Below are positions 23,681-41,445 of a DNA stretch of 64,000 bases, in pieces. How positions within the stretch are numbered: position 1 is the first letter of the stretch; each line of letters begins with the position of its first letter. The position numbers and the translations under genes are program-made. The stretch lies in sequence record PV740454.1. One strand, 5' to 3'. The notes beneath the pieces were generated by a model. That model ran no database searches. It was not told where the DNA came from and worked only from the letters and a program-made list of their open reading frames with translations.

Positions 23681-24205
23681 CTATTTTCTTCGACTTGCTT
23701 TATTTGCTTTTCGCTTCGCTCTTCTAAGCTCTTTACGTTTAGCAATCTTATCAGCACGTCGAACAGCATCATAATCCGCTGCACAAGACGCTGCAAACGC
23801 ATCTGGCTTGAATACCGGCTCTTGACCCACATAGCCAAGAATCGTACCTTTAGCTTCGTTATACGCGATATGAGAACGATGTGCTGGGTCTGGGTTGATA
23901 TCGACGTGAACTTCGAAGCCTCGCGGACCGCACATCGGTTTAACTCTCAGTGCAGTTTCACCGGCTTTATAAACTTCAGTCATCAAACGACTTCGAATAC
24001 CATCTTTACTAGACATATAAGCTGGTTCAGTTTCGACAGATTTGAAAACTTGAGCACCTTTACTACCTTCAAGATGTATGATTATCACAGTAGCGTAACT
24101 GATCATGTCACTTTTACGCTTGCTATCACACCCGACGTATATAGTACTATTCGGATGACTGTTGTTGATAGCTGTTTCTATTGCTTCCCAATCGAACATT
24201 TTCAC
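23681..24205 (-). CDS. RNase H-like YkuK/DUF458 family protein
   Basis: IYVGCDS, RL-x2-EV, EVHVDIN, KPDAFAASCAAD acidic-residue motifs. Confidence 0.85.
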   Translation of the reverse strand: MKMFDWEAIETAINNSHPNSTIYVGCDSKRKSDMISYATVIIIHLEGSKGAQVFKSVETEPAYMSSKDGIRSRLMTEVYKAGETALRVKPMCGPRGFEVHVDINPDPAHRSHIAYNEAKGTILGYVGQEPVFKPDAFAASCAADYDAVRRADKIAKRKELRRAKRKANKASRRK

Positions 24206-24251: not shown

Positions 24252-25691
24252 TTAAAAACTGTATCGGTCAACGCCGACAGTTTTCAGCATGATCTTGACT
24301 GGCTCAAGTTCACCACCTAACAGTGAAGTTAGAATTGATGGGCTACAACCCGAAACCAGTGCAGTACCTGCTTCACCTGATTTAACAGGAACGTTGTCTA
24401 GACGACCACGAATGTTCCAGAAAACTAGCTGAGGCATATCATAACCAGCACGTGCGTACTTAGCTTTGATTGCATCGAAGTTAGCAACTTCTGCTCGACC
24501 ATACCAACCACCACCGCGATTTGCTTGGTCGAATTCCATGTCACTCATGATAAGCAACTTGGTTGGCATATCTTCTTGTGAAAGATTTGCACGACTAGCA
24601 CGTTCTAAAAGAACGTCGAAACATTTCCCGATGTTAGTGCTCATGTCTTCGCCTGAGCGATTCATGTTCGAAAGACGCTCTTTCAGCGTGTTACCGCTCA
24701 ACTTGTGGAAGTGCGGATTACTTGAGAACGAAATGAATTGATCTTTGAAGATACCTTCATTGCGCTCAGCAACGTAAATGCCGAGAGACATTGCTACTTG
24801 CTTACAAGTAACTGCGTTAGCAGCGTGTACACCGTTGATCGGTGTGCTCATAGATCCAGACACGTCTACAACAGGGATGATACGCTCATCAGAGCCTTCC
24901 ATGTAGTTCGGTAGAGCTTTCCATTGCTCGTTCGCTACAGATGCGTTACCGCGTTCAACGCTTTTAACAACATCGTATGGGAACAATGCACCAGCGTTGA
25001 TCTTCGCTTCACCTTTTTGTAGTGATTCGATGTAGTTTGTGTAACGAGTTTCAGCGTTACGACCGAATGCTTTTTGATAACGAGCAGACGCTACAGAAGG
25101 CAACTTACCGAAGTCGATTGCATCCCAATCTTTCGCACACATCTTTTGTTCAACAGTGTCAGACAAAAGAGCAAGAATCTTACGCCACTGCTTAGCAGTT
25201 ACACCAAGAGATTTGATCGTGCGCTTGAACACGTGACCGTTCTTGCTGTTTTCACGAGGGAACCACTTAGCAGCAAGCCCGTTTTTGTCATTGACAATCG
25301 CATTTGACCACATAGTGATCGCGTCTTTTTCGAGTTTAGTACCGAAAGCAACGATTAAGTCATCGAAACGACCTAATTCTGGTACTTTTGACATTACAGC
25401 GCGTGCCACTTCTGGCTGTTCATTACAAAGTTTAGCGAACAGAGTACGGAAAGTACCACGTTCACCTGCGCCACCTCGAACGTCACGAGACCATAGCAAG
25501 ATGCGTGTCGCCAGTTCTGGGTTTTCTGCAAACGCACGACCGAACAGTGTTTTAGACTGATCGTTGCCACGCATAGCAGCAATACCGAAGAACAAGTTTA
25601 GACACTCGTTACCTGAAGTGCTGTGCGTAACTGCACCGTTTGCTGTACGTGAATCGTTTGATTGCATAGCGTTCATAAATAGACTTGTCAT
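24252..25691 (-). CDS. TROVE/Ro60-like RNA-binding protein (DUF2828-type helical domain + vWA)
   Basis: RD-x-RGG-x-GER, GRFDDL, LAAKWFPRE; vWA MIDAS VVDVSGSM...T...SDMEFD; start re-assigned to ATG 25691 (GGAG + 9 nt). Confidence 0.8.
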   Translation of the reverse strand: MTSLFMNAMQSNDSRTANGAVTHSTSGNECLNLFFGIAAMRGNDQSKTLFGRAFAENPELATRILLWSRDVRGGAGERGTFRTLFAKLCNEQPEVARAVMSKVPELGRFDDLIVAFGTKLEKDAITMWSNAIVNDKNGLAAKWFPRENSKNGHVFKRTIKSLGVTAKQWRKILALLSDTVEQKMCAKDWDAIDFGKLPSVASARYQKAFGRNAETRYTNYIESLQKGEAKINAGALFPYDVVKSVERGNASVANEQWKALPNYMEGSDERIIPVVDVSGSMSTPINGVHAANAVTCKQVAMSLGIYVAERNEGIFKDQFISFSSNPHFHKLSGNTLKERLSNMNRSGEDMSTNIGKCFDVLLERASRANLSQEDMPTKLLIMSDMEFDQANRGGGWYGRAEVANFDAIKAKYARAGYDMPQLVFWNIRGRLDNVPVKSGEAGTALVSGCSPSILTSLLGGELEPVKIMLKTVGVDRYSF

Positions 25692-25724
25692 TGCTGTAAG
25701 CTCCATTATCAAGGATCAAAAATT

Positions 25725-26318
25725 ATGTTTCATATTGTATATCAAATCACAAATATAATAAACAATAAAATTTATGTCGGTAAACACTCAACTGAGAATA
25801 TACACGACGATTATATGGGTTCTGGTAAATTATTACTCAGAGCCATTTCAAAGTATGGCAAAGAAAATTTCACAAAAGAGATATTATTCGTATCTCACGA
25901 TGAGAATGAAGCATATCATAAAGAATCTGAAATTGTCAATGAAAATTTTGTGTTGCGCGAAGACACATACAATTTAAAAATTGGAGGTCTAGGTGGCTCA
26001 TCAGGTATAGAATCGCCATGCAAAGGTCGCGCTTTGAGTGAAGATACTAAACGAAAAATGAGAAAGAGTAAACACTTTTCTCAAAAACATTTAGATTTTC
26101 TTTCAGAAAAGCTATCAGCGTACAACAAATCTAGAAAGGGTAAATCTAGAACTGATCTTAACGGCTCATCTAACCCTATGCATAAAGGTACATGGGTAAC
26201 GCCAAAAGGTAAATTTGAGACATCAGAACTAGCTGCAACGGTAAATCAATGCAGCCAGTCTACTGTTGTAAGACGATGCAATAACCCAAATTTCACAGAT
26301 TGGTTCATCGAAAATTAG
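25725..26318 (+). mobile_element. Free-standing GIY-YIG homing endonuclease (Seg-like) with NUMOD3-like repeat
   Basis: IVYQITNIINNKIYVGKH...YMGSG...AISKYGKENFTKEIL; antisense to all neighbours. Confidence 0.9.
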
Positions 26319-26948: not shown

Positions 26949-27316
26949 AGATAATCCTTAATTGTCCCCGTGAAGTGACGAATACATGAGCTGTCAAGAC
27001 GTTTTCGACCATCACCTTCTACATCTGGCAGCGTATATTCATCGTTAAATGGTTGACCGCTTTCTTTTGCGATCTCGTAAGCATCAGCTCGATTGAAGTA
27101 CTCACCACAATAGTTGATGAATCCCTGCCCACGATCACCTAGTTCACTTCGATGTTCAATTGTGCAACCAAGCTCTTTGATTAGCTTGAACACGCTTTGC
27201 ATGTTTCTACCGAAATGACAGCTATCGGCGACTACGACTTCACGTTGTTCACCGTTTGGTAATGTAACGCGAATTGCGTTTGCAGCAGCAGAGATCACAT
27301 TGACGTGTTCTGACAT
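26945..27316 (-). CDS. Conserved phage hypothetical protein
   Basis: I-x-AAA...H...QGF-x4-GE-x2-NR-x2-A-x-EIA-x3-GQ pattern. Confidence 0.7.
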   Translation of the reverse strand: MSEHVNVISAAANAIRVTLPNGEQREVVVADSCHFGRNMQSVFKLIKELGCTIEHRSELGDRGQGFINYCGEYFNRADAYEIAKESGQPFNDEYTLPDVEGDGRKRLDSSCIRHFTGTIKDYL

Positions 27317-27654
27317 GAATCATACCTCATAAAAATAGAACCAACACGCTTGTATTGATCAGTGTTCATTAATAGACGTGCCATTTTAGTGTGAGCAACT
27401 GGATTACTTGTCACTAGAATTACAGTCTTCGGATAATTGCCATGATCAATTGCATGAGATAAAATGTGATATCCCTCATGACCTAGTGCATCGCCTAAGT
27501 CATTGTCCATGAATAATGTGATATCAGTTAGATTCGTGTGCTTGATGAATTTCATGCCTTCTTTATATGTGCGAAGAACTAGCTTTTCATCTTCACGAAC
27601 TGTATCTGCGGTTAACTTATTAATGTCACGCAGATCATCGATCAATACATACAT
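27295..27654 (-). CDS. Cyclic-phosphate-processing receiver (REC)-like domain protein
   Basis: LIDDLR...RTY-x-EG...LFMDNDLG...EGY-x-IL...TSNPV; start re-assigned to ATG 27654. Confidence 0.7.
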   Translation of the reverse strand: MYVLIDDLRDINKLTADTVREDEKLVLRTYKEGMKFIKHTNLTDITLFMDNDLGDALGHEGYHILSHAIDHGNYPKTVILVTSNPVAHTKMARLLMNTDQYKRVGSIFMRYDSCQNTSM

Positions 27655-27715
27655 AATATTTCTCTTGCTTATTGAATAAATACTATCATACAGTTCAAAC
27701 AAAGAGAAGTCAACA

Positions 27716-28425: not shown

Positions 28426-28650
28426 TTAATGTGCTAATCTCATCAAACGGCGCATACGTTCTCTTTCTGATAGCTCATCTAGATTTTCTGTTTTCACCTC
28501 TTTGACTTCTTCTGACTGCTCATCGTCTGATGCTTTTTTCTTAGCATCTGGGCCGATGTTGTCCCATAATGAGCTGTTACGCCAGTTTTCGTTATATCCG
28601 TTACCCAACCCGCGACCTTCGCGTGCGTGTGATTTTCTGTATTGACTCAT
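28426..28650 (-). CDS. Hypothetical protein
   Basis: 74 aa charged ORF. Confidence 0.65.
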   Translation of the reverse strand: MSQYRKSHAREGRGLGNGYNENWRNSSLWDNIGPDAKKKASDDEQSEEVKEVKTENLDELSERERMRRLMRLAH

Positions 28651-28847
28651 TCGTCTGAATTCTTTGTTACTTGTTTTACCGCACCAGCTACAGCAACAGC
28701 ACCTGCCACTTTAGCACCCGTTTTAGCTTTTTTAGCTACAGACTTTGCTTTTGATTTCACCTTGTCACGCAGCTTACGTTTTTTGTTATCGACTGGCTTC
28801 TTGTCTTCAATTTCCGACATGAATACGTCGAATGTTTTATCACTCAT
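28647..28847 (-). CDS. Small basic protein with capsid-targeting-like N-terminus
   Basis: MSDKTFDVFMSE; GGAG RBS; ACTAAATA at 28880-28887. Confidence 0.65.
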   Translation of the reverse strand: MSDKTFDVFMSEIEDKKPVDNKKRKLRDKVKSKAKSVAKKAKTGAKVAGAVAVAGAVKQVTKNSDE

Positions 28848-28921
28848 GGCAATTCTCCATCTGTGTTTGAGTATAACTGTATTTAGTATCAAAATAACTT
28901 AAATTGCAAACTCCATAAACA

Positions 28922-28946
28922 AAAAAACCCGCTCAATGGCGGGTTC
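28922..28946 (-). terminator. Terminator ending the tRNA island transcript
   Basis: AACCCGCC-ATT-GAGCGGGTT + T tract. Confidence 0.8.
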
Positions 28947-28961
28947 TAATGTGCAATCAAC

Positions 28962-29235
28962 AGACATTCGAGAAGTGTTTTTTCGTCTTTCCTTAAATCT
29001 CATTTGACTAGCTTGTTTCTTATACAAGCAAGCATTTACGTATTCAGCGCAACGCCCATTCCGTTTAACGATACGAAAATCGTCGAAGTCATTTCCTACT
29101 TCACGAGAACACAGTTCCCTTAGCTGTCAGGCTTACGTCATCACTGAGAATGCAGCTAGTACGCCCCGGTCGTCACCTTGAAGATGACTATTCCAATTTT
29201 AGCTTCTTTGATTAGAATATTGCTGTACAATGTCT
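28962..29235 (-). ncRNA. Long structured RNA 1 (274 nt), Y-RNA-like closing stem + TACAGCAA
   Basis: AGACATT/AATGTCT closing helix; paralog of 33372-33581. Confidence 0.7.
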
Positions 29236-29246
29236 TATTGCGAATT

Positions 29247-29335
29247 TGGCGGAGATACTGGGAGTCGAACCCAGAGAACGCTATTAACGTCCGACACCTT
29301 AGCAGGGTGCTGTCATACCTTTAGACCATATCTCC
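29247..29335 (-). tRNA. trnS: tRNA-Ser(GCT)
   Basis: Cloverleaf, loop CTGCTAA, long variable arm, CCA. Confidence 0.95.
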
Positions 29336-29337
29336 AG

Positions 29338-29517
29338 TTATTTCTCACCGCGTTCTGCTTTGCTAATTTCAACAGCCGCTATTTGTGCGTTTGCTTCTTC
29401 CTCAGTATCATGTGTACCAAGTACGCGACCTTTAGACGAAAGAGCAACCCACTTGTTACCACGCTTCTGCACTTTCTCAGTCAGTTCGTGATATTCATCA
29501 AACGTTTTCAATTTCAT
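29338..29517 (-). CDS. Small protein with capsid-targeting-like N-terminus
   Basis: MKLKTFDEYHELTE; TATAAATA at 29543-29550. Confidence 0.75.
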   Translation of the reverse strand: MKLKTFDEYHELTEKVQKRGNKWVALSSKGRVLGTHDTEEEANAQIAAVEISKAERGEK

Positions 29518-29569
29518 GTCTAATCCCTCAGTTAGTTTATAATATTTATAACTGAGCAACTTTTAATCA

Positions 29570-29750
29570 GTGGCATGCTGCTATCATGCTCAGACATATA
29601 TTTGCTCTTAATGCAGGCGTATGCCACGCGCAGCGCAGATCCCATTTGATAATTTAACGACTTACGGGACTCGTAGCAAGTCTACACATAGCCTTTCAGC
29701 TATATCTTCTTTTAAGACCATAGTGTCGTACGGTCTACTCACCTAAGTGA
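29570..29750 (-). ncRNA. Multi-hairpin structured RNA candidate
   Basis: Hairpins AGACC/GGTCT, TAGC-TGAAAG-GCTA, GACTT/GAGTC, GTGGCAT/ATGCCAC; no ORF. Confidence 0.5.
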
Positions 29751-29753
29751 ATT

Positions 29754-29820
29754 TGGTAGTCACGAGGGAATCAAACCCTCACTCAACGAGTTTTAGAGGC
29801 TCAGAGCAATCATTGTGACC
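29754..29820 (-). tRNA. Degenerate tRNA with CUA (amber-suppressor) anticodon and truncated D arm
   Basis: GGTCAC/GTGACT + ACCA; loop CTCTAAA; T arm GAGGG-TTTGATT-CCCTC; 67 nt. Confidence 0.6.
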
Positions 29821-29821
29821 A

Positions 29822-30163
29822 TTATAATTTGAATCCGATGCTCAACACCCAACGAGATTCATTAGCTTTAGTCGTGCGGTGATAGAACTTATCAGCACGA
29901 AACCCAAACAACCTATCTTTGATGATATGAAATGCACCATTACAGATGAATTCACCGCCAGATTTCGGTTTCTTTACAACCCAATTTATTCTATAATGGA
30001 ATTTACCAGGGTCTTTATGTTTAGGAATATACGAGTCTTTAGGATAATGAAACAAGTAGAAATCAAAGTGTTTGCTGTAAAACAGCGTGAATACTCGATA
30101 TCCAGTTGCCCATTTATCTAAGCCCCATTTAAATCTTCTTAACGTTGGTTTTTGAGTCTACAT
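29822..30163 (-). CDS. 2OG-Fe(II) oxygenase with in-frame TAG at codon 2 (read-through or pseudogene)
   Basis: AAAGG RBS-ATG-TAG-ACT...; same frame continues KWGLDKWATGYRVF...HYPKDSYIPKHKDP...GGEF...FYH...RWVLSIG. Confidence 0.7.
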
Positions 30164-30179
30164 ACAAATTACCTTTAAT

Positions 30180-30256
30180 TGGTGCCCAACCCGAGATTCG
30201 AACTCGGATCATCTAGTGTTTGAAACTAGCGCCTCTGCCAATTGGACTAGTTGGGC
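30180..30256 (-). tRNA. trnL: tRNA-Leu(CAA), short variable loop
   Basis: Loop TTCAAAC, 5-nt variable loop, ACCA. Confidence 0.9.
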
Positions 30257-30262
30257 GAAATA

Positions 30263-30339
30263 TGGTACGCATGGGCGGATTCGAACCGCCATCCCTGAGA
30301 ATTTAAACCTCATGCCTCTGCCAATTGGACCACATGCGC
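30263..30339 (-). tRNA. trnL: tRNA-Leu(TAA), short variable loop
   Basis: Loop TTTAAAT, 5-nt variable loop, ACCA. Confidence 0.9.
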
Positions 30340-30345
30340 GTTATT

Positions 30346-30536
30346 GTGTCGTTATGTCGATGTTCACGACACTGCTAGGCTGCCGAGTTATCAACTCATT
30401 ATACTAGCCAAGGGCTTCTTACACACTAATCACTACTCGCAAGTAGCAACTCAAACATGCTCAGTTCCGAGCGATTAACCTCTTAGACCGTAGTCTCGAA
30501 CCATAACCGACCCCTATGCACATCCAACTTGTGCAT
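30346..30536 (-). ncRNA. Multi-hairpin structured RNA candidate
   Basis: At least six hairpins (ATGCAC/GTGCAT, AGAC/GTCT, GCTC/GAGC, GCTACT/AGTAGT, GAGTT/AACTC, GTGTCGT/ACGACAC). Confidence 0.55.
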
Positions 30537-30541
30537 CGTCT

Positions 30542-30763
30542 TTAATACTGATCTTGCAACCCGCACTTCGTGCATGTCGCAGTAATTATTTCCATACAAC
30601 CATCAGCTATCATTTCATGTTCACAATCGACTTGCTTGTTATATTGATGCAAGTTTATACGTTCTTGATGAAGCTCAACTTGAAGCTTTCGAATTCGTTG
30701 CTTAGAATAAGCGACATTCGCTTCAGCTTGTCGAGTAAGTATTTCTTTAACTTCCGGTTTCAT
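30542..30763 (-). CDS. Hypothetical coiled-coil protein with C-terminal Cys cluster
   Basis: Start re-assigned to MKPEV (the track start overlaps tRNA-Cys). Confidence 0.65.
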   Translation of the reverse strand: MKPEVKEILTRQAEANVAYSKQRIRKLQVELHQERINLHQYNKQVDCEHEMIADGCMEIITATCTKCGLQDQY

Positions 30764-30780
30764 GATATAGTTCTCAAATT

Positions 30781-30854
30781 TGGAGCTCGAACAGGGAGTC
30801 GAACCCTGACCTGCGGATTTGCAATCCGTCATACTGCCATTATACGATTCGAGC
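30781..30854 (-). tRNA. trnC: tRNA-Cys(GCA)
   Basis: Loop TTGCAAA, TCCA end. Confidence 0.93.
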
Positions 30855-30859
30855 GTTGT

Positions 30860-31162
30860 TTAGTATGTTGCAAAACGAATTTTAATGTTTTGCTCATCTA
30901 CTGGCAATACTGCAAACAGATAAAAATGCGCAAAGTCAGGCATTTCATTTTTATGTCGTTTTATCTGCTCATTTTCTATTGCTCGTTCAATCAACCAATA
31001 GAAGTCAATTCGATGCATATCATCAGTAAATGGTATAATCAATGAGCGAGATTCAACGTGCGCTGCGTTTAATGAACTACCATGTATAACTTCACCAGTT
31101 CTGCTATCAACCGCATTACACGGACAACAGATTAAGTGGATTTTCTTGCCATGAATATACAT
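30860..31162 (-). CDS. Hypothetical protein
   Basis: 100 aa ORF between tRNAs. Confidence 0.6.
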   Translation of the reverse strand: MYIHGKKIHLICCPCNAVDSRTGEVIHGSSLNAAHVESRSLIIPFTDDMHRIDFYWLIERAIENEQIKRHKNEMPDFAHFYLFAVLPVDEQNIKIRFATY

Positions 31163-31169
31163 AATTTAC

Positions 31170-31310
31170 CTACGGAAAATAAACTAGTGCTTCGTGATTA
31201 ACTAGACCTTCGATTTCTTCTTCAGTCAGTTCTTCAAGTCGCTTGATTACTTCATCTGGTAAAACACCATCGGGAACTTTAACAGATATCGTCATTAACA
31301 CTTCAGTCAT
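31170..31310 (-). CDS. Small hypothetical protein
   Basis: Start re-assigned to MTEVL (the track start overlaps tRNA-His). Confidence 0.5.
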   Translation of the reverse strand: MTEVLMTISVKVPDGVLPDEVIKRLEELTEEEIEGLVNHEALVYFP

Positions 31311-31336
31311 AATATATTTCTCATTCAAATGTACTT

Positions 31337-31411
31337 TGGGGTGACCGACGGGAATCGAACCCGCGAGTTCCTGAATCACAATCAGGGGCATTACCACTCT
31401 GCCACAGCCAC
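31337..31411 (-). tRNA. trnH: tRNA-His(GTG)
   Basis: Loop TTGTGAT, C73, CCA; genomic -1 base is T. Confidence 0.93.
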
Positions 31412-31486
31412 ACCAAAGTACACTTAATGAACTTTGGGATACATTTACGTGGATCATTCGAGCGTAGCACTACTACGCTAGTAAGT

Positions 31487-31798
31487 TTATTTGATTTTCG
31501 ATAGCATTTTATGCATATCTTTCGTGTTGTTTAGAAAGTCAACATAATGAGCAAAATCAACGTCTCTGTCGTATTGACGAACTAGAGAACTAGTCTTTGC
31601 TAGCCACTCATCGGTGATGATATCATTCAACCCGAAGTTTTTCTTCAGAGCCATTAAGCGTCGCTCGTAATCATCACCGTCGATGTTCATTGGGTCAGGA
31701 GCGATATAGTCAGAAAGAATCTCAGCATTTTTGTCGATACGTTTCATATCGAACTTTTCATCAAGTTGAGATTCAGTGTATTCTTTAAATGATTGCAT
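31487..31798 (-). CDS. Protein with capsid-targeting-like N-terminus
   Basis: MQSFKEYTESQLDE; ACTAAATA at 31824-31831. Confidence 0.75.
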   Translation of the reverse strand: MQSFKEYTESQLDEKFDMKRIDKNAEILSDYIAPDPMNIDGDDYERRLMALKKNFGLNDIITDEWLAKTSSLVRQYDRDVDFAHYVDFLNNTKDMHKMLSKIK

Positions 31799-31822
31799 AG
31801 TCTTATCTCTTGTATTAAAAAC

Positions 31823-32065
31823 TTATTTAGTGTTCTTGAGATAGATACTATCACTCGAAAGCTCTCTTGTAAACATATTTTTGAAATAAATTTCAATATC
31901 GTCTGAAGTAGTAGAAGATTCAATGCTCAATGCAAGTTCTAGAATCTTACCACGTTTATAACCTGCACGCCAACAGTCAAACATAAGTCTGTCCATTTGT
32001 TTCAGTTTTTCAACTTGATTTGGGTGTACGTATTCGTGAGATTCTAGCAAAGCTGGTGTGTTCAT
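31823..32065 (-). CDS. Hypothetical protein
   Basis: 80 aa ORF. Confidence 0.65.
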   Translation of the reverse strand: MNTPALLESHEYVHPNQVEKLKQMDRLMFDCWRAGYKRGKILELALSIESSTTSDDIEIYFKNMFTRELSSDSIYLKNTK

Positions 32066-32087
32066 AATATAGTTCTCATCATAAGAA

Positions 32088-32161
32088 TGGTAGCCCCTGT
32101 CGGATTCGAGCCGACTCTACTTCTGTGTAAGAGAAGCGTACTCCCATTATACTAAGGGGCT
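32088..32161 (-). tRNA. trnV: tRNA-Val(TAC)
   Basis: Loop CTTACAC, AGCCCCT/AGGGGCT, ACCA. Confidence 0.92.
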
Positions 32162-32162
32162 A

Positions 32163-32306
32163 TTAGACTGGGTAATTGTATTTCCATTGATCTGGGTCTG
32201 GTCTACCACAACGAATACACGATGTGCCTAACCAATTTCTCTGACCACAAACACAAGTGTAACCTTGTTGTTCGAAGTTTTCACCACCGATACTAAGAAT
32301 TTTCAT
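32163..32306 (-). CDS. Small zinc-ribbon-like protein
   Basis: MKILSIGG...CVCG-x7-CIRCG. Confidence 0.55.
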   Translation of the reverse strand: MKILSIGGENFEQQGYTCVCGQRNWLGTSCIRCGRPDPDQWKYNYPV

Positions 32307-32321
32307 ACAATCACCAAAAAT

Positions 32322-32395
32322 TGGAGCGGGTACACGGACTCGAACCGACTCTACTTCTGTGTAAGAGAAGCGTACTCCCATTATACTAAGGGACT
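32322..32395 (-). pseudogene. Chimeric tRNA: Val 5' portion fused to Gly 3' end; acceptor stem unpaired
   Basis: 5' part near-identical to 32088-32161; 3' GTGTACCCGCTCCA identical to tRNA-Gly 32763-32837. Confidence 0.85.
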
Positions 32396-32402
32396 ATTAA
32401 CC

Positions 32403-32747
32403 TTATTTGACTTGAACTACAAACGAATTAGGTATAGCTGTTATTACAGGTAATATAAATTCAATCGTTCGTTGAGATAATGCATGAGTCGAAATCAACC
32501 CATTGATCGCCATCGATCTCATTCTACCCAAGTCTTCGTTCAGAACAAAACGAAATCGAACGCGAATATCTTGAATATCAAGATCATTTTTATTACCACT
32601 GATACGATACACCGACTTTAACTTCAAGTATTCAGTAATTAAATCACGCTCAGCTTTGTTACGAACACAAATTATATATGTTCGTTCATTACTCATGTGA
32701 ATCAACATCGCATTTAGAGCATCGATTATATTAGAAGTTTCGTTCAT
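32403..32747 (-). CDS. Hypothetical protein
   Basis: 114 aa ORF. Confidence 0.65.
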   Translation of the reverse strand: MNETSNIIDALNAMLIHMSNERTYIICVRNKAERDLITEYLKLKSVYRISGNKNDLDIQDIRVRFRFVLNEDLGRMRSMAINGLISTHALSQRTIEFILPVITAIPNSFVVQVK

Positions 32748-32762
32748 AGTATTGCCAGAATA

Positions 32763-32837
32763 TGGAGCGGGTACACGGACTCGAACCGAGACGAACGACT
32801 TGGAAGGACATCATGCTACCAATTACATCATACCCGC
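32763..32837 (-). tRNA. trnG: tRNA-Gly(TCC)
   Basis: Loop CTTCCAA, TCCA end. Confidence 0.9.
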
Positions 32838-32842
32838 ATTGT

Positions 32843-33049
32843 TTAATCTGAAGCGTCGAACAAATCACGTATTGCACGTAGATTCGTAAGCTCTACTGTA
32901 AGTGTTCTAATAAAGAACGGGTTAGTCTCTTTAGCGAGACGATTTTCAACATAACGAATTTTATCGCGTATGTTGCCCTTGCTTAGTGTAAAGTAGTCAT
33001 GCTTCTTAACCTTTTTGAATGAATTTAAGCTTGTGTTTAAGCTTGCCAC
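32843..33049 (-). CDS. Hypothetical protein
   Basis: 68 aa basic ORF. Confidence 0.5.
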   Translation of the reverse strand: MASLNTSLNSFKKVKKHDYFTLSKGNIRDKIRYVENRLAKETNPFFIRTLTVELTNLRAIRDLFDASD

Positions 33050-33155
33050 GAGATTTATGTCGCTTACACAGTTTTGTACCGTGATAGCTATGATATTGAT
33101 AAAAGCTAGTTAGCTTCTTATACAACGATTTCATGCATACCCTCATGATTGAAAT

Positions 33156-33231
33156 TGGTGGAGACACCGATACTCGAAATCGGATCTAACGCCGTATGAA
33201 AGCGCCGCTCTACCACTTGAGCTACATCTCC
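33156..33231 (-). tRNA. trnM: tRNA-CAT, probably elongator Met
   Basis: Loop TTCATAC, ACCA. Confidence 0.85.
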
Positions 33232-33244
33232 GTATCTTGGTTTT

Positions 33245-33360
33245 GTATGTTTTACATGACGATAACCAGAAACGTGCATAATAATGCCACGTGATACATC
33301 CTATATCACGGCTAACTGAGTTAGCATATCGTGCCTTGCGGCTGTAGTGTCGTTTCCGAC
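33245..33360 (-). ncRNA. Multi-hairpin structured RNA candidate
   Basis: GTCG-GAAA-CGAC, GCC-GCAA-GGC, GCTAAC/GTTAGC, GTGATA/TATCAC hairpins. Confidence 0.5.
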
Positions 33361-33371
33361 GAATTAAGTAC

Positions 33372-33581
33372 AGACAATACCGAAGTGTTTTTTCGTCTTT
33401 GACATGAATCGGAGTTGACTATCTTATTGGTTCTCAACAAGCAAATATCGTCTGTTTCAGCGACGCGCCTATCTGACTATTTCTAGACAGAGAGAATCTT
33501 TCCTTTCAAGCTGCACCGAAGCACTGCCCAGGTTAAGATCATCACCTTTTTAAGTAAGTAATTTGTTGCTGTATATTGTCT
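33372..33581 (-). ncRNA. Long structured RNA 2 (210 nt), Y-RNA-like closing stem + TACAGCAA
   Basis: AGACAATA/TATTGTCT closing helix; 19-nt identity with RNA 1. Confidence 0.7.
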
Positions 33582-33646
33582 AACTATCTGCACTCGTACG
33601 AATCTCGAAAGGTATCGTAGTTGTCGTGCAGAAGTTCTTAAATCTT

Positions 33647-33883
33647 TTACTCGTCCATCAATCCGTCGTAGAAATCATCCAATGCTGAATGCACACGACG
33701 TAAACGATCAACGTTCCCACGACCGTAGTTCATGTCAGTTTCACGCGCCCAATCCATCATTGCACTAGATTGCATGATTGAATAAGCCTTGTGAAAGAAG
33801 TCTTCAAACTGTTCTGACGATTCAAACTCACGTGGTAATGTTCTTGCTTCGTTTAATTTCTTAAACTCGTTATATGTTTTCAT
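33647..33883 (-). CDS. Internal-head-protein-like small protein
   Basis: MKTYNEFKKLNE; TATAAATA at 33905-33912. Confidence 0.8.
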   Translation of the reverse strand: MKTYNEFKKLNEARTLPREFESSEQFEDFFHKAYSIMQSSAMMDWARETDMNYGRGNVDRLRRVHSALDDFYDGLMDE

Positions 33884-33920
33884 GAGATTCTCCTATTAAA
33901 AACATATTTATACAAGAACT

Positions 33921-33996
33921 TGGCATCCCCACTAGGATTCGAACCTAGAACCACATCCTTAGAAGGGACGTGCTCTTCCAATTGAGCTATGAGGAC
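33921..33996 (-). tRNA. trnR: tRNA-Arg(TCT)
   Basis: Loop CTTCTAA, GCCA. Confidence 0.95.
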
Positions 33997-34070
33997 ATTA
34001 AAAAGATTCGATCCATAAGCTCGTGCAGATGATGGTAGTAAAGAGAATCCGCGCTCATGTGATCGAAATT

Positions 34071-37785: not shown

Positions 37786-37901
37786 TGGTAGTCGGGGCTG
37801 GATTCGAACCAGCGACCACGTGCTTAACAGGCAATTGAAAGAGTGCTGGAGCGATACTTGACAGTATCATTCTTCGTGCTCTACCACTGAGCTACCCGAC
37901 T
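37786..37901 (-). ncRNA. tRNA-like RNA with about 40-nt insertion in the anticodon arm
   Basis: Normal acceptor, D and T arms + ACCA; insert AAGAAT-[GATACT-GTCA-AGTATC]-GC-TCCAGCAC...TGC-CTGTTAA-GCA. Confidence 0.8.
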
Positions 37902-39682: not shown

Positions 39683-39803
39683 TGGTGGAGAGTACGGGAT
39701 TTGAACCACGTGACAAAAAGATTTACCTAGTTAAGGTTGCAGCATGAATGCTTGTCAGAATTCTTTAACATTCTTTCGCTCTACCAGACTGAGCTAACTC
39801 TCC
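39683..39803 (-). ncRNA. tRNA-like RNA with about 45-nt anticodon-arm insertion
   Basis: GGAGAGT/ACTCTCC-ACCA; normal D arm; AAAGA/TCTTT stem around an insert containing TGCTGCAA. Confidence 0.75.
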
Positions 39804-39817
39804 GTTGTAAAAACATA

Positions 39818-39941
39818 TTGATGCGGGTGCAGGAGTCGAACCTGCGTCACGATCTTATGAATGATATGCGAATTGATTGCCGTACAGATTCTTATCAGAA
39901 TCAGTTTTTGCTACGTGTGCTAACCACTACACCAACCCGCA
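39818..39941 (-). ncRNA. tRNA-like RNA with anticodon-arm insertion (paralog of 40192-40338)
   Basis: TGCGGGT/ACCCGCA; hairpin GATTCT-GATA-AGAATC then TACGGCAA; T arm GCAGG/CCTGC. Confidence 0.78.
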
Positions 39942-40191
39942 TCAATATGTTTTCGGGAGTGCTTGCATAGACATTTCTCTACACAAGCACAAAATCCTAT
40001 TATATGCCTTATCTAATCATAACACAATCTGGAATCGTGCGCTTTAAGTACGGGATTGATGACCCGTTCGCATATGATTAGCGTAAAAGTATGATTACGC
40101 ACCTTTTCTTCTTCAATGTCCAAGGCAAATAGGACGATGAATACTAGTGCGAGAAGATATACAATCAAATTGTTCACCTCGCTTTGTTAGT

Positions 40192-40742: not shown

Positions 40743-41006
40743 TTAAACAGAAAGAATAATACCGCTTTCCGTCTCACCGCGCTCAAGCGCAGCATGTTTG
40801 ATCTGTAGTTGTGATACCGCTTGTTGAAGCTCAAGAATAGCTTTGTCATAAAGCTTGTTGTTCTCTTTAAGCAAAGTAATCTGATCAGTCTGCAAGCCGA
40901 CAATATACGTCAATAGAACGACGCTCTCATCTGAATTAAGTGATTCAGGGTCTTCTTGATACTTCTTCAATACTGCTTCGGTAGATAGATCAGTCATTGT
41001 TAGCAA
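40743..41006 (-). CDS. Coiled-coil hypothetical protein
   Basis: 87 aa; heptad pattern. Confidence 0.7.
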   Translation of the reverse strand: MLTMTDLSTEAVLKKYQEDPESLNSDESVVLLTYIVGLQTDQITLLKENNKLYDKAILELQQAVSQLQIKHAALERGETESGIILSV

Positions 41007-41445
41007 CCCAATTTAAGTCTAGTGGTTCGATGTATTCATCAACAAGACGAACTTCAGCGTTAACAAACATCGGTGTGATAACGTCATCATAAGATAACGT
41101 AACGTGAGGTTGATAGTCAGGGTAGTCGTGAGTACCACCGATAGAGATAAGATCTTCGTGACGTTCAACTAGTTCATCACATTTCATTTTAGCGACGACT
41201 GCGTGTTTACCGTCTTGTGTTTTCCAGCAGTCAATCTGCTCTATAGTAGCAACGAAGGTTGTATCTACTGTAGGCACGTCAATTTGCTTACGACTATAAA
41301 GCACAGTCACATGAAAATCATCTGGTTCTAGCGGATTTTGCAGACGAAGCGTTTTCTGCAATCGAATAAGTTCTTGTTTGCTTGCTTCGTCTAGCTTGAT
41401 ACCAACGTAAGTTCCCTGACTCTCAAGGAACTTAGATAGTTTCAT
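40990..41445 (-). CDS. 57B: 2H phosphoesterase, T4 gp57B / Acb1-like
   Basis: Two HxT motifs (FHVTVLYS, PHVTLSY); synteny with 57A and gene 1. Confidence 0.88.
   Translation of the reverse strand: MKLSKFLESQGTYVGIKLDEASKQELIRLQKTLRLQNPLEPDDFHVTVLYSRKQIDVPTVDTTFVATIEQIDCWKTQDGKHAVVAKMKCDELVERHEDLISIGGTHDYPDYQPHVTLSYDDVITPMFVNAEVRLVDEYIEPLDLNWVANND

What the first reader, a model, noticed from the sequence alone, without database searches (positions are those of the whole stretch)
28962..33581. Two paralogous 210-274 nt structured RNAs of unknown class
Seen: 28962-29235 and 33372-33581 share, in order on the minus strand, the closing helix + TACAGCAA, AAGGTGA, GCGY...GCTGAA, TGCTTGT, TAGTCAA and an identical 19-mer AAAGACGAAAAAACACTTC. 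The linkers differ and include hairpin indels. Conserved AAG(G)TG could pair with conserved CACTT. Inference: a conserved tertiary core. By eye the 3' blocks (CTAGTCAAATGA...GACGAAAAAACACTT) loosely recall the RNase P CR-IV/CR-V regions, but the CR-I GAGGAAAGUC is missing, so this is only a hypothesis.
Basis: partly seen in the sequence, partly recalled or inferred. Interest (0 to 1): 0.72.

Follow-up and report, generated by a model that had tools for sequence, protein, structure and literature searches.

The report
Two Ro60-linked structured phage RNAs
Two related, unannotated structured RNAs sit inside the tRNA gene cluster of a KVP40-like Vibrio phage. Their conserved 5' module recurs in front of the phage's Ro60-like gene, so they are more likely that protein's RNA partners (Y-RNA-like) than an RNase P.

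Summary
The window is Vibrio phage CZ01, a relative of nt-1 and KVP40. Both elements are real: RNA A (28962-29235) and RNA B (33371-33581), both on the minus strand. They keep their positions in the tRNA operon in seven lineages of KVP40-like phages. No record annotates them, and Rfam gives no hit even at E<=10.

Compensatory changes support a closing helix P1, several hairpins and a newly recognised helix P6. P6 stacks on P1 to give a constant 12 bp, the length of a tRNA acceptor plus T stem.

The main new result concerns the 5' module GACAWU-N-UACAGCAA (P1 5' strand plus the junction J1). It occurs exactly three times in a complete 250-kb relative genome: at RNA A, at RNA B, and just upstream of the start codon of a DUF2828/DUF7788 gene. 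In that mRNA leader it pairs with AAUGUC, which contains the AUG. The protein's predicted structure matches Ro60 (TROVE plus vWA) over its full length.

Best reading: a new Y-RNA-like family, matured like tRNAs and bound by the phage Ro60-like protein, which probably represses its own mRNA through an operator mimic. That these are structured RNAs is near certain. The partner and the function are inferred.

The parts
28962..29235 (-). RNA A, about 274 nt. It is the last gene of the tRNA operon, 11 nt after tRNA-Ser(GCU).
   Evidence: It is conserved at 70-96% identity in KVP40-like phages, and P1, PA1, PA2, PA4 and P6 covary.
33371..33581 (-). RNA B, about 211 nt, between tRNA-Arg(UCU) and tRNA-Met.
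   Evidence: In the B alignment 92.6% of cells are paired. Sixteen pairs show double changes, against 5.6 in shuffles (0/500).
29220..29235 (-). RNA A 5' module: P1 5' strand AGACAUU, then G, then J1 UACAGCAA.
33566..33581 (-). RNA B 5' module: P1 5' strand AGACAAUA, then J1 UACAGCAA.
28962..28973 (-). RNA A continuous 12-nt 3' strand: P6 3' strand UCUCG (28969-28973) plus P1 3' strand AAUGUCU (28962-28968).
33372..33383 (-). RNA B continuous 12-nt 3' strand: P6 3' strand UCGG (33380-33383) plus P1 3' strand UAUUGUCU (33372-33379).
28998..29010 (-). RNA A: UAGUC (29006-29010, candidate pseudoknot 5' strand) and P6 5' strand UGAGA (28998-29002).
33409..33421 (-). RNA B: UAGUC (33417-33421, candidate pseudoknot 5' strand) and P6 5' strand CCGA (33409-33412).
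28972..28990 (-). RNA A: the invariant 19-mer in the P6 loop. It contains GACGA (28983-28987), the candidate pseudoknot 3' strand.
33382..33400 (-). RNA B: the same 19-mer in the P6 loop.
29036..29052 (-). RNA A hairpin P4, with a CUGAAU(A) loop.
   Evidence: helix 1: all 5 pairs show double changes.
33449..33465 (-). RNA B hairpin P4: 5 bp, a bulged A and a CUGAAA loop.
29011..29029 (-). RNA A hairpin P5.
   Evidence: helix 2: 7 of 7 pairs show double changes.
33423..33441 (-). RNA B hairpin P5.
33473..33540 (-). RNA B-specific domain: P2/P2a/P2b (33495-33540) and P3, which carries a GAAA loop (33473-33490).
   Evidence: helices 3-6.
28924..28947 (-). Intrinsic terminator that closes the tRNA/RNA operon after RNA A.
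24252..25691 (-). Ro60-like gene (Pfam DUF2828 + DUF7788, PHROG 850), with its ATG at 25689-25691. The J1 motif UACAGCAA at 25691-25698 runs into the start codon: its last A is the A of the AUG.
27295..27702 (-). cREC_REC (cyclic-phosphate-processing receiver) gene, which recurs with the Ro60-like gene in the contigs examined.
23681..24205 (-). PF04308 RNaseH-like gene, immediately after the Ro60-like gene.

Best explanation
RNA A and RNA B are two paralogues of a previously undescribed family of structured non-coding RNAs, about 190-275 nt long, specific to KVP40-like vibriophages.

Shown:
- They lie inside the phage tRNA operon on the strand that carries the tRNA genes.
- They fold into a multi-hairpin body closed by helix P1.
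- The 3'-terminal 12 nt form one continuous strand of a P1+P6 coaxial stack of constant length.
- The 5' module (P1 strand plus UACAGCAA) is duplicated in the leader of the phage's Ro60-like gene. There it pairs with a segment that contains the start codon.

Inferred:
1. The RNAs are cut out of the polycistronic tRNA transcript by the tRNA-processing enzymes, RNase P at the 5' side, because the 12-bp stack imitates a tRNA acceptor/T minihelix.
2. The mature RNAs are bound through the P1/J1 module by the Ro60-like (TROVE+vWA) protein. On this reading they act as Y-RNA-like partners in a phage RNA quality-control or repair module that also includes the cREC and PF04308 RNaseH-like proteins.
3. 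The same protein binds the look-alike hairpin in its own mRNA and represses its translation when free of RNA. This would be an operator mimic, as in ribosomal-protein and ThrRS autoregulation.
For: - Conservation and synteny. Both RNAs occur in 48-50 Vibrio phage records and two metagenomic lineages.
- Covariation in B. 92.6% of cells are paired. Sixteen pairs show double changes against 5.6 in shuffles (0/500) and 1-4 in slid controls.
- Covariation in the shared 3' domain of A+B. The covariation score is 0.447 against 0.162. The P6 pairs read GC12/CG9/GU3 and CG11/AU8/UA4.
- Covariation in A. PA1, PA2, PA4 and P6 are supported.
- P1+P6 equals 12 bp in 27 of 29 sequences while the split shifts from 9+3 or 8+4 to 7+5.
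- An operon terminator follows directly after A.
- The DUF2828/DUF7788 protein model (pLDDT 79.8) matches full-length Ro60 structures. These include Thermus phage phiLo Ro60 (9kop, 9l5y) and Xenopus and human Ro60, with E from 1e-8 to 1e-5 and TM 0.53-0.60 for nine of the ten hits with E<=0.001, 0.43 for the tenth.
- The motif GACAWTNTACAGCAA (up to 1 mismatch) occurs exactly three times in the 250,514-bp VS2 genome: RNA B, RNA A and the Ro60-like leader. Shuffles give 0.2.
- The same leader motif is seen in KVP40, nt-1, VH7D, L034 and L036. It is also seen in L038, L205 and L206, where no A/B RNA was found in the DNA held.
- The leader helix GACAUU/AAUGUC pairs in 48 of 48 cells, with one compensatory pair. 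It encloses the Shine-Dalgarno sequence and J1, and the AUG sits in the stem.
- The gene context points to RNA repair: cREC and the PF04308 RNaseH-like gene here, and Rnl1, PNKP and a 2H ligase next to the homologue in L207.
- Precedent. Ro60 genes, including phage ones, have Y RNAs encoded nearby, and Ro60 contacts mainly the 5' strand of the Y RNA stem (PMC4201824, PMC12135203).
Against: - No transcript, processing or binding data exist for these RNAs.
- They are 3.3 and 7.7 kb from the Ro60-like gene, not adjacent as in classic rsr-yrlA loci.
- They lack the GNCGAA(N0-1)G motif near the 5' end and the D/T tRNA-like domain of YrlA, and the Rfam YrlA and Y_RNA models do not hit them.
- The Ro60-like protein is far more widespread than the RNAs. 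No A/B RNA was found near it in D479, L037, L038 or L207.
- Among about 50 more distant homologues the leader motif is absent, apart from VH7D itself and one partial case, L389.
- The factor that reads the shared module could be another protein, such as a nuclease.
- The leader helix is almost invariant, and its 3' strand is also constrained by coding.
- Single-sequence folding energies are unremarkable (z = -1.6 and -1.1).
- In this very window (CZ01) the leader P1 strand has been replaced next to a homing endonuclease, so autoregulation cannot be essential.
Confidence: 0.45

Rival explanations
1. They are stable RNAs of the tRNA operon with a function unrelated to Ro60, like T4 rnaC/rnaD. 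They might be decoys or sponges for host tRNA-targeting nucleases, or scaffolds. The shared helix + UACNGCAA module would then be a processing or stability signal read by a nuclease, either host RNase E/P or the phage PF04308 RNaseH-like or cREC proteins.
For: RNA A occupies the same place as T4 rnaD/rnaC, the end of the tRNA operon. The tRNA-like 12-bp stack fits this reading. The module also occurs in the inserts of three tRNA-like genes, which would fit a processing signal.
Against: A pure processing signal does not explain why the only non-RNA-gene copy in a 250-kb genome lies in the translation-initiation region of the Ro60-like gene with the AUG inside the helix. There is no sequence or model similarity to T4 rnaC/rnaD.
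Confidence: 0.25
2. The RNAs, the insert-bearing tRNA-like genes and the Ro60-like/cREC/RNaseH-like/RNA-ligase proteins together form a protein-dependent tRNA splicing or repair system. UACNGCAA would mark the sites of cleavage and ligation.
For: The module sits in every 45-54-nt insert of the tRNA-like genes. The phage clade encodes RNA ligase, PNKP and phosphoesterases.
Against: No splice junctions are known, and clean removal of the inserts does not obviously restore anticodon arms in all three genes. RNAs A and B are not interrupted tRNAs.
Confidence: 0.1
3. They are cis-regulatory elements, either a riboswitch or an attenuator. In this view RNA A plus its terminator controls the downstream ORF at 28647-28892.
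For: RNA A is followed by an intrinsic terminator and then an ORF.
Against: RNA B has no terminator and is followed by a tRNA. The terminator stem shares no alternative pairing with P1. The simplest reading is an operon-end terminator. In ValKK3-type phages other genes follow.
Confidence: 0.03
4. It is a minimal RNase P-like or other ribozyme.
For: There is only a loose by-eye resemblance of AGAUAG..GAUU and GAC(G)AAAAAAC to the CR-IV/CR-V regions. The location among tRNA genes also fits.
Against: No hit to any RNase P or self-cleaving ribozyme family at E<=10. CR-I is absent, there is no P4, and CACUUC pairs locally in P6. The host supplies RNase P.
Confidence: 0.02
5. It is not a functional RNA: either short protein-coding ORFs or decaying remnants of a mobile element.
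For: A few GenBank records call 'hypothetical proteins' across the regions. Homing endonucleases abound in the array.
Against: Indels are not multiples of three. The substitutions are compensatory in helices. Position is conserved in seven lineages, and B is 95% identical between CZ01 and KVP40.
Confidence: 0.02

Closest known systems
Bacterial and phage Y RNAs (YrlA/YrlB, D. radiodurans Yrn1, Thermus phage phiLo Yrl1/Yrl2) bound by Ro60/Rsr
   Same: More than one paralogous ncRNA is encoded upstream of a Ro60-fold gene on the same strand. The 5' and 3' ends pair in a terminal stem. A conserved motif sits on and after the 5' strand. There is some tRNA mimicry. The setting is RNA repair.
   Different: There is no sequence or covariance-model similarity. 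The GNCGAA/CGAA motif is not at the 5' end, and there are no D/T arms. These RNAs are 2-3 times longer and embedded in a tRNA operon 3-8 kb from the gene. The protein belongs to the DUF2828/DUF7788 branch, not Pfam TROVE. To my knowledge, an mRNA-leader mimic of the RNA has not been described for Ro60.
Phage T4 rnaC and rnaD (species 1 and 2 stable RNAs)
   Same: They are small stable RNAs of unknown function. They are co-transcribed with, and lie at the distal end of, the tRNA gene cluster of a T4-like phage, in the syntenic genome region (gene 1, 57A, 57B/Acb1 ... tRNAs).
   Different: There is no detectable homology. One T4 RNA carries a canonical T arm (GGGUUCGAAUCCC) and the other ends in CCA. 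The T4 RNAs are 119-139 nt, and T4 has no DUF2828 gene in that region.
Operator mimics in translational autoregulation (E. coli ThrRS-thrS leader, ribosomal proteins L1, S8 and L20, T4 gp32, gp43 and RegA)
   Same: A copy of the protein's RNA-binding site is placed over the translation-initiation region of its own mRNA.
   Different: Here the regulation is only predicted from sequence.
Large phage-associated ncRNAs next to tRNAs (GOLLD, ROOL)
   Same: They are structured ncRNAs of unknown function in phage genomes, adjacent to tRNA genes.
   Different: Those are 500-800 nt and have their own Rfam models, none of which match. No protein link is known for them.
Bacterial RNase P RNA
   Same: Only the tRNA-related context and a few short A-rich strings.
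   Different: CR-I, P4, the S-domain and the C-domain architecture are all absent.

Membership tests
RNase P RNA (bacterial A/B, archaeal, minimal T type) | Match to the family covariance models | tested here: not met
   There is no RNase P hit over 28500-34000 even at E<=10, and none at the gathering threshold.
RNase P RNA (bacterial A/B, archaeal, minimal T type) | CR-I (GAGGAAAGUC) pairing with CR-V to form the P4 long-range helix | tested here: not met
   The motif is absent. The 'CR-V-like' CACUUC pairs with the adjacent N4-GAU segment to form P6, with covariation.
RNase P RNA (bacterial A/B, archaeal, minimal T type) | Pre-tRNA 5' cleavage activity | not testable with these tools
   This needs an enzymatic assay.
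Y RNA / YrlA (Ro60-associated ncRNA) | Encoded close to a Ro60/TROVE gene | tested here: inconclusive
   A Ro60-fold gene lies 3.3 kb downstream of A and 7.7 kb downstream of B on the same strand. It is not adjacent, but it is linked by the shared 15-nt module.
Y RNA / YrlA (Ro60-associated ncRNA) | Terminal stem formed by the 5' and 3' ends | tested here: met
   P1 is 7-9 bp, with compensatory changes between A, B, L036-B and 1.081.O-B.
Y RNA / YrlA (Ro60-associated ncRNA) | GNCGAA(N0-1)G (bacteria) or GGUCCGA (vertebrates) motif near the 5' end (PMC4201824) | tested here: not met
   The 5' motif is GACAWU-N-UACAGCAA. GACGAA occurs only in the P6 loop and is not universal: it reads GACGAU, GACUUU or GACAAU in relatives.
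Y RNA / YrlA (Ro60-associated ncRNA) | tRNA-like D and T arms (YrlA), or a match to Rfam YrlA / Y_RNA | tested here: not met
   No YrlA, Y_RNA or tRNA hit falls on either element. Only an acceptor/T-like 12-bp stack is present.
Y RNA / YrlA (Ro60-associated ncRNA) | Physical binding to Ro60 | not testable with these tools
   This needs RIP or EMSA.
T4 rnaC/rnaD stable RNAs | Location at the distal end of the phage tRNA operon | tested here: met
   RNA A follows the last tRNA and precedes the terminator. The T4 layout is shown.
T4 rnaC/rnaD stable RNAs | Sequence or structure homology to the T4 RNAs | tested here: not met
   The covariance model R1 finds nothing in the T4 locus L040. One T4 RNA carries a canonical T arm and the other ends in CCA, neither of which is seen here.
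Riboswitch / transcription attenuator | Aptamer whose closing helix competes with an expression platform upstream of a conserved gene | tested here: not met
   Only A has a terminator, and it has no alternative pairing with P1. B is followed by a tRNA.
Ro60 / TROVE proteins (for the linked protein 24252-25691) | HEAT-repeat ring plus a C-terminal vWA domain | tested here: met
   The AF2 model has pLDDT 79.8 and pTM 0.76. All ten Foldseek PDB hits with E<=0.001 are Ro60/TROVE and are full length (alignments of 515-575 columns); vWA-only hits follow.
Ro60 / TROVE proteins (for the linked protein 24252-25691) | Match to the Pfam TROVE domain | tested here: not met
   Only DUF2828 and DUF7788 match, even at E<=10. 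Sequence search of the PDB gives nothing significant.

The most novel reading that the evidence does not exclude
The helix + UACNGCAA module is the address label of a phage-encoded RNP built on the Ro60-like protein together with the cREC phosphoesterase, the PF04308 nuclease and RNA ligases. On this reading the RNP acts on a whole set of phage RNAs. It would excise or remodel the 45-54-nt inserts of three tRNA-like genes, which amounts to protein-dependent tRNA splicing or editing in a bacteriophage. It would use RNAs A and B as scaffolds or regulators, and it would feed back on its own mRNA.
Probability: 0.1. Interest if true: 0.92.

Novelty: new variant of a known kind. Interest (0 to 1): 0.74.

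Why it matters
Ro60-Y RNA particles are known from animals, some bacteria and a few phages, but what they do in phage infection is barely explored. DUF2828/DUF7788 proteins are common: more than 7,800 relatives turned up in a single search, and most of the long contigs I examined that carry them look like T4-like phage genomes. No RNA partner is known for them.

This locus offers three things:
- two concrete candidate partner RNAs with a defined, covariation-supported architecture;
- a 15-nt recognition module;
- a predicted autoregulatory operator.

Each can be tested directly with EMSA, reporter fusions and phage deletions in Vibrio natriegens or V. parahaemolyticus. The locus also adds a new structured RNA family to the small set of phage ncRNAs embedded in tRNA arrays. 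It points to a tRNA-like minihelix as the route by which such RNAs are matured.

Tried and rejected
- Rfam at the gathering threshold and at E<=10 found only tRNAs on or near the elements. The weak Trp/Leu-leader hits (E 0.5-0.7) cover the terminator.
- RNase P, group I intron, self-cleaving ribozyme, tmRNA, 6S, SRP, HEARO/omega RNA, GOLLD and ROOL gave no hits.
- The AAGGUG/CACUU pairing was rejected on relatives.
- I considered a box C/D-like reading, with GUGAUGA as the C box and CUGA as the D box. I dropped it because GAUGA is not conserved: relatives read GUAAUGA, GUGAUUG or GUGACU.
- J1 pairing with the P4 loop (CAGC/GCUG) or with the P5 flank (UUGCU) is not maintained in relatives.
- The pseudoknot UAGUC/GACGA has three invariant pairs, one covarying pair (UA19/AU3) and one mismatch. 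I keep it only as a candidate.
- Collection scans for distant members returned only KVP40 and VH7D plus chance matches. This covers three IMG/VR pattern scans and one metagenome scan (checked with nhmmer).
- The covariance model R1 for the 3' domain found no copy in T4, D479, L037, L038 or L207.
- No transcriptome paper for KVP40-like phages was found. The KVP40 genome paper and the Burroughs & Aravind 2016 paper are not held.
- My first register for the leader helix was off by one column and was corrected.

Full report
**Identity of the window and of the two elements**

The window is 100% identical to Vibrio phage CZ01 over both elements. Phage nt-1 is 96-98% identical. These are T4-like Straboviridae related to KVP40.

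The finding lies in the phage's tRNA array. ARAGORN finds 26 tRNA genes and Rfam finds 28 tRNA hits, all on the minus strand.

- RNA A (28962-29235, minus) starts 11 nt after the last tRNA, Ser-GCU. An intrinsic terminator follows it at 28924-28947.
- RNA B (33371-33581, minus) lies between tRNA-Arg(UCU) and tRNA-Met.

The 19-mer has 2 matches against 0.07 expected.

**Conservation**

BLAST against 50,697 phage records finds A in 48 records and B in 50, all of them Vibrio phages. In nearly all of them the regions are unannotated; a few carry 'hypothetical protein' calls. B is 95% identical between CZ01 and KVP40, while A is only 70-74% identical.

I fetched twelve phage loci. Two metagenomic relatives came from contigs that encode the neighbouring protein (L034 and L036).

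Both paralogues keep their places in seven lineages:
- nt-1/CZ01
- the KVP40 group
- the ValKK3 group
- D482/K566
- 1.081.O
- L034
- L036

B always lies after tRNA-Arg(UCU). A always lies after tRNA-Ser(GCU), at the end of the array. In 1.081.O, copy A keeps P1 and the central domain but has lost the shared 3' domain.

Pattern scans of IMG/VR and of metagenomes, and an nhmmer or covariance-model screen of everything fetched, found no member outside this clade.

**Not a known RNA family**

Rfam 15 gives nothing on either element at gathering thresholds or at E<=10. That includes RNase P, Y_RNA, YrlA, ribozymes, introns, GOLLD and ROOL.

T4's rnaD and rnaC occupy the equivalent position, the end of the tRNA operon, in a syntenic region (gene 1, 57A, 57B/Acb1). 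They share no similarity with A or B. One carries a canonical T arm and the other ends in CCA.

**Secondary structure of RNA B**

On a 14-sequence MAFFT alignment:

| Measure | Observed | Control |
|---|---|---|
| Cells paired | 92.6% | 33-44% in slid controls |
| Pairs with changes on both sides | 16 | 5.6 in shuffles (0/500); 1-4 in slid controls |

The helices are:
- P1, the closing helix. AGACAAUA/UAUUGUCU becomes AGAUAAU/AUUAUCU in 1.081.O and AGGCAAU/AUUGCCU in L036.
- P1a, a small hairpin.
- The P2/P2a/P2b arm.
- P3, with a GNRA loop: GAAA in most, GUGA in L036.
- P4, 5 bp with a bulged A and a CYGAAW hexaloop.
- P5.

**The shared 3' domain**

For the 3' domain shared by A and B, I built a covariance model and aligned 29 copies to it. 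Counts on that alignment give a covariation score of 0.447 against 0.162 in shuffles. Sixteen pairs have double changes. The alignment was fitted to P4, P5 and core P6, so it leans towards those helices.

The N4-GA segment after UAGUCAA pairs with UC-NN immediately 5' of the P1 3' strand. The pair types are GC12/CG9/GU3 and CG11/AU8/UA4. In L034-A a U-U mismatch becomes G-C, as GAUU changes to GAGU and CACUUC changes to CACCUC.

The invariant 19-mer is the loop of P6. An H-type pseudoknot, UAGUC/GACGA, is possible but rests on a single covarying pair.

**RNA A and folding energy**

RNA A has its own central domain, with covarying helices PA1, PA2 and PA4. PA2 reads GCYG-CWUUCU-CRGY.

Single-sequence folding energies are not exceptional, with z = -1.6 and -1.1. 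The evidence for structure is therefore comparative.

AAGGUGA is not a shared core block. In B it is the 3' strand of P1a, which covaries locally. In D482 that local pairing is kept while the proposed AAGUG/CACUU pairing is broken. In A it sits in a hairpin insert found only in nt-1/CZ01. CACUUC belongs to P6.

**A tRNA-like minihelix**

P1 and P6 share one continuous 12-nt 3' strand. Their summed length is 12 bp in 27 of 29 sequences, and the junction moves from 9+3 or 8+4 in B to 7+5 in A and in 1.081.O-B.

Twelve base pairs is the length of the tRNA acceptor/T coaxial stack, which RNase P and other tRNA enzymes measure; this is established knowledge. I infer, but have not shown, that the RNAs are released from the polycistronic tRNA transcript by the tRNA-processing machinery.

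**The neighbouring genes**

Downstream on the same strand lie:
- a cREC_REC gene (27295-27702);
- a T4_Y16D-type gene;
- a gene with Pfam DUF2828 + DUF7788, PHROG 850 'RNA-binding protein' (24252-25691);
- a PF04308 RNaseH-like gene (23681-24205).

The cREC, DUF2828 and PF04308 genes recur together in other T4-like contigs. In one contig the DUF2828 gene sits beside Rnl1, PNKP and a 2H ligase.

An AlphaFold2 model of the DUF2828 protein, built from 36 sequences, has pLDDT 79.8 and pTM 0.76. It matches Ro60 structures over its full length. The hits include the Thermus phage phiLo Ro60 (9kop, 9l5y) and Xenopus and human Ro60 (1yvr, 1yvp, 2i91, 9nf8), with E from 1e-8 to 1e-5 and TM 0.53-0.60 for nine of the ten hits with E<=0.001 (the tenth, 9nen, has TM 0.43). 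vWA-only hits follow.

The protein is therefore a Ro60-like TROVE+vWA protein, although Pfam TROVE itself does not match.

**The link between the RNAs and the Ro60-like gene**

While checking the junction motif UACAGCAA, which occurs 11 times in the window against 2.7 expected, I found one copy abutting the start codon of the Ro60-like gene. In relatives the whole 5' module of the RNAs is present there. KVP40 reads GACAUUUUACAGCAA 21 nt before the AUG. The same holds in nt-1, VH7D, PVA8, phi-pp2, L034 and L036. It also holds in L038, L205 and L206, where I found no A/B RNA in the DNA held.

In the complete 250,514-bp genome of phage VS2, GACAWTNTACAGCAA with up to 1 mismatch occurs exactly three times: RNA B, RNA A and this leader. 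Shuffles give 0.2.

In the leader, GACAUU pairs with AAUGUC, which is the -1 base, the AUG and the next two bases. The pairing holds in 48 of 48 cells, with one compensatory pair in L038 (GACAUA/UAUGUC), against 15-48% in slid registers. The leader thus reproduces P1 plus J1 of the RNAs, with the Shine-Dalgarno sequence in the loop and the start codon in the stem.

This is the layout of a translational operator that mimics a protein's RNA ligand. The simplest reading has two parts. The Ro60-like protein binds the P1/J1 module of RNAs A and B, and it also binds its own mRNA. Ro60 is known to contact mainly the 5' strand of the Y RNA stem, and phage Ro60 genes have Y-like RNAs upstream (PMC4201824, PMC12135203).

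**Caveats**

- The helix in the leader is almost invariant, and its 3' strand is also constrained by coding.
- Among about 50 more distant DUF2828 genes the motif is absent, apart from VH7D itself and one partial case.
- D479 has a diverged leader and no A/B RNA in its tRNA array.
- In CZ01 itself and in D482 a homing endonuclease lies just upstream. The P1 strand of the leader has been replaced, and only UUACAGCA-AUG remains.

**A related observation**

Three tRNA-like genes in the same array (39821-39942, 39686-39803 and 37789-37901) have normal acceptor, D and T arms but carry a 45-54-nt insert at the anticodon arm. They are conserved in the clade and in D479.

In all 12 homologues printed that carry an insert, the insert is a short hairpin followed after 1-2 nt by U(A/U/G)C-N-GCA(A/C). 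This is again a helix followed by a UACNGCAA-like string. These RNAs are closer to YrlA-type tRNA mimics than A and B are. They may be further ligands of the same protein, or substrates of a splicing or repair activity.

**Verdict**

- The elements are a new family of structured phage RNAs (confidence about 0.9).
- They are not RNase P.
- Their most likely role is as Y-RNA-like partners of a Ro60-like protein, with an autoregulatory operator mimic (confidence about 0.45).
- The main rival is that the shared module is a processing signal read by another factor.

All functional steps (maturation by RNase P, protein binding, autoregulation) are inferences that need the experiments listed.

Noticed in passing
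window 39821-39942, 39686-39803, 37789-37901 (minus): Three tRNA-like genes have intact acceptor, D and T arms but a 45-54-nt insert at the anticodon arm. Rfam scores two of them about 50 bits as tRNA and the third (39821-39942) only as a weak tRNA-Sec hit, while ARAGORN is silent. KVP40 annotates one as a pseudo-tRNA. Each insert is a 5-6-bp hairpin followed by a UACNGCAA-like string, the same module as P1/J1 of RNAs A and B and the Ro60-like leader. A weak YrlA hit at 39778-39849 spans the junction between two of them.
   Followed up: partly
window 25689-25760 and 25725-26318 (+): A GIY-YIG homing endonuclease gene sits immediately upstream of the Ro60-like gene in CZ01, and a homing endonuclease sits at the same place in D482. 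The first codons (MTSLF instead of MSAF) and the P1 strand of the leader differ from nt-1 and KVP40. This looks like a co-conversion tract that removed most of the predicted operator.
   Followed up: partly
window about 32320-32400 (minus): A chimeric pseudo-tRNA: its 5' part copies tRNA-Val(UAC), and its 3' part copies the T arm and acceptor of tRNA-Gly(UCC). It lies between small ORFs (32163-32381 and 32403-32747) that separate tRNA-Gly from tRNA-Val, which are adjacent in KVP40. This looks like a recombination scar. Rfam gives a partial tRNA hit of 27 bits.
   Followed up: partly
window 29757-29822 (minus): A tRNA-like sequence with an acceptor stem, a T arm and a CCA end but no obvious D arm, and a loop containing CUA. 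Neither ARAGORN nor Rfam calls it.
   Followed up: no
window 30340-30540 and 29530-29760 (minus): Two further gene-free, hairpin-rich stretches of about 200 nt inside the tRNA array, with no Rfam hit. They could be additional ncRNAs or degenerate tRNAs.
   Followed up: no
window 33232-33370 (minus); L034 4334-4515; L036 4624-4770: The spacer between RNA B and tRNA-Met is also conserved. It includes the hairpin UCGUCG-GAAA-CGACA and a GCC-GCAA-GGC hairpin. L034 and L036 share a different conserved element of about 130 nt at this place.
   Followed up: no
window 40990-41445 (minus): An Acb1 (anti-CBASS 2H phosphodiesterase, T4 57B) homologue lies upstream of the tRNA array, next to the dNMP kinase (gene 1), as in T4.
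   Followed up: no
L207 5738-9216 and 14989-15546: In a freshwater T4-like contig the Ro60-like gene is flanked by a PNKP kinase plus HAD phosphatase, T4-type RNA ligase 1 and a 2',5' RNA ligase-family protein. This is a compact RNA-repair island. A 490-nt gene-free gap follows the Ro60-like gene.
   Followed up: no
L004 9907-10056 (phage 1.081.O): Copy A in this phage keeps P1, J1 and the A-specific central domain but lacks P4, P5, P6 and the 19-mer. The 3' domain is therefore dispensable for at least one paralogue.
   Followed up: partly
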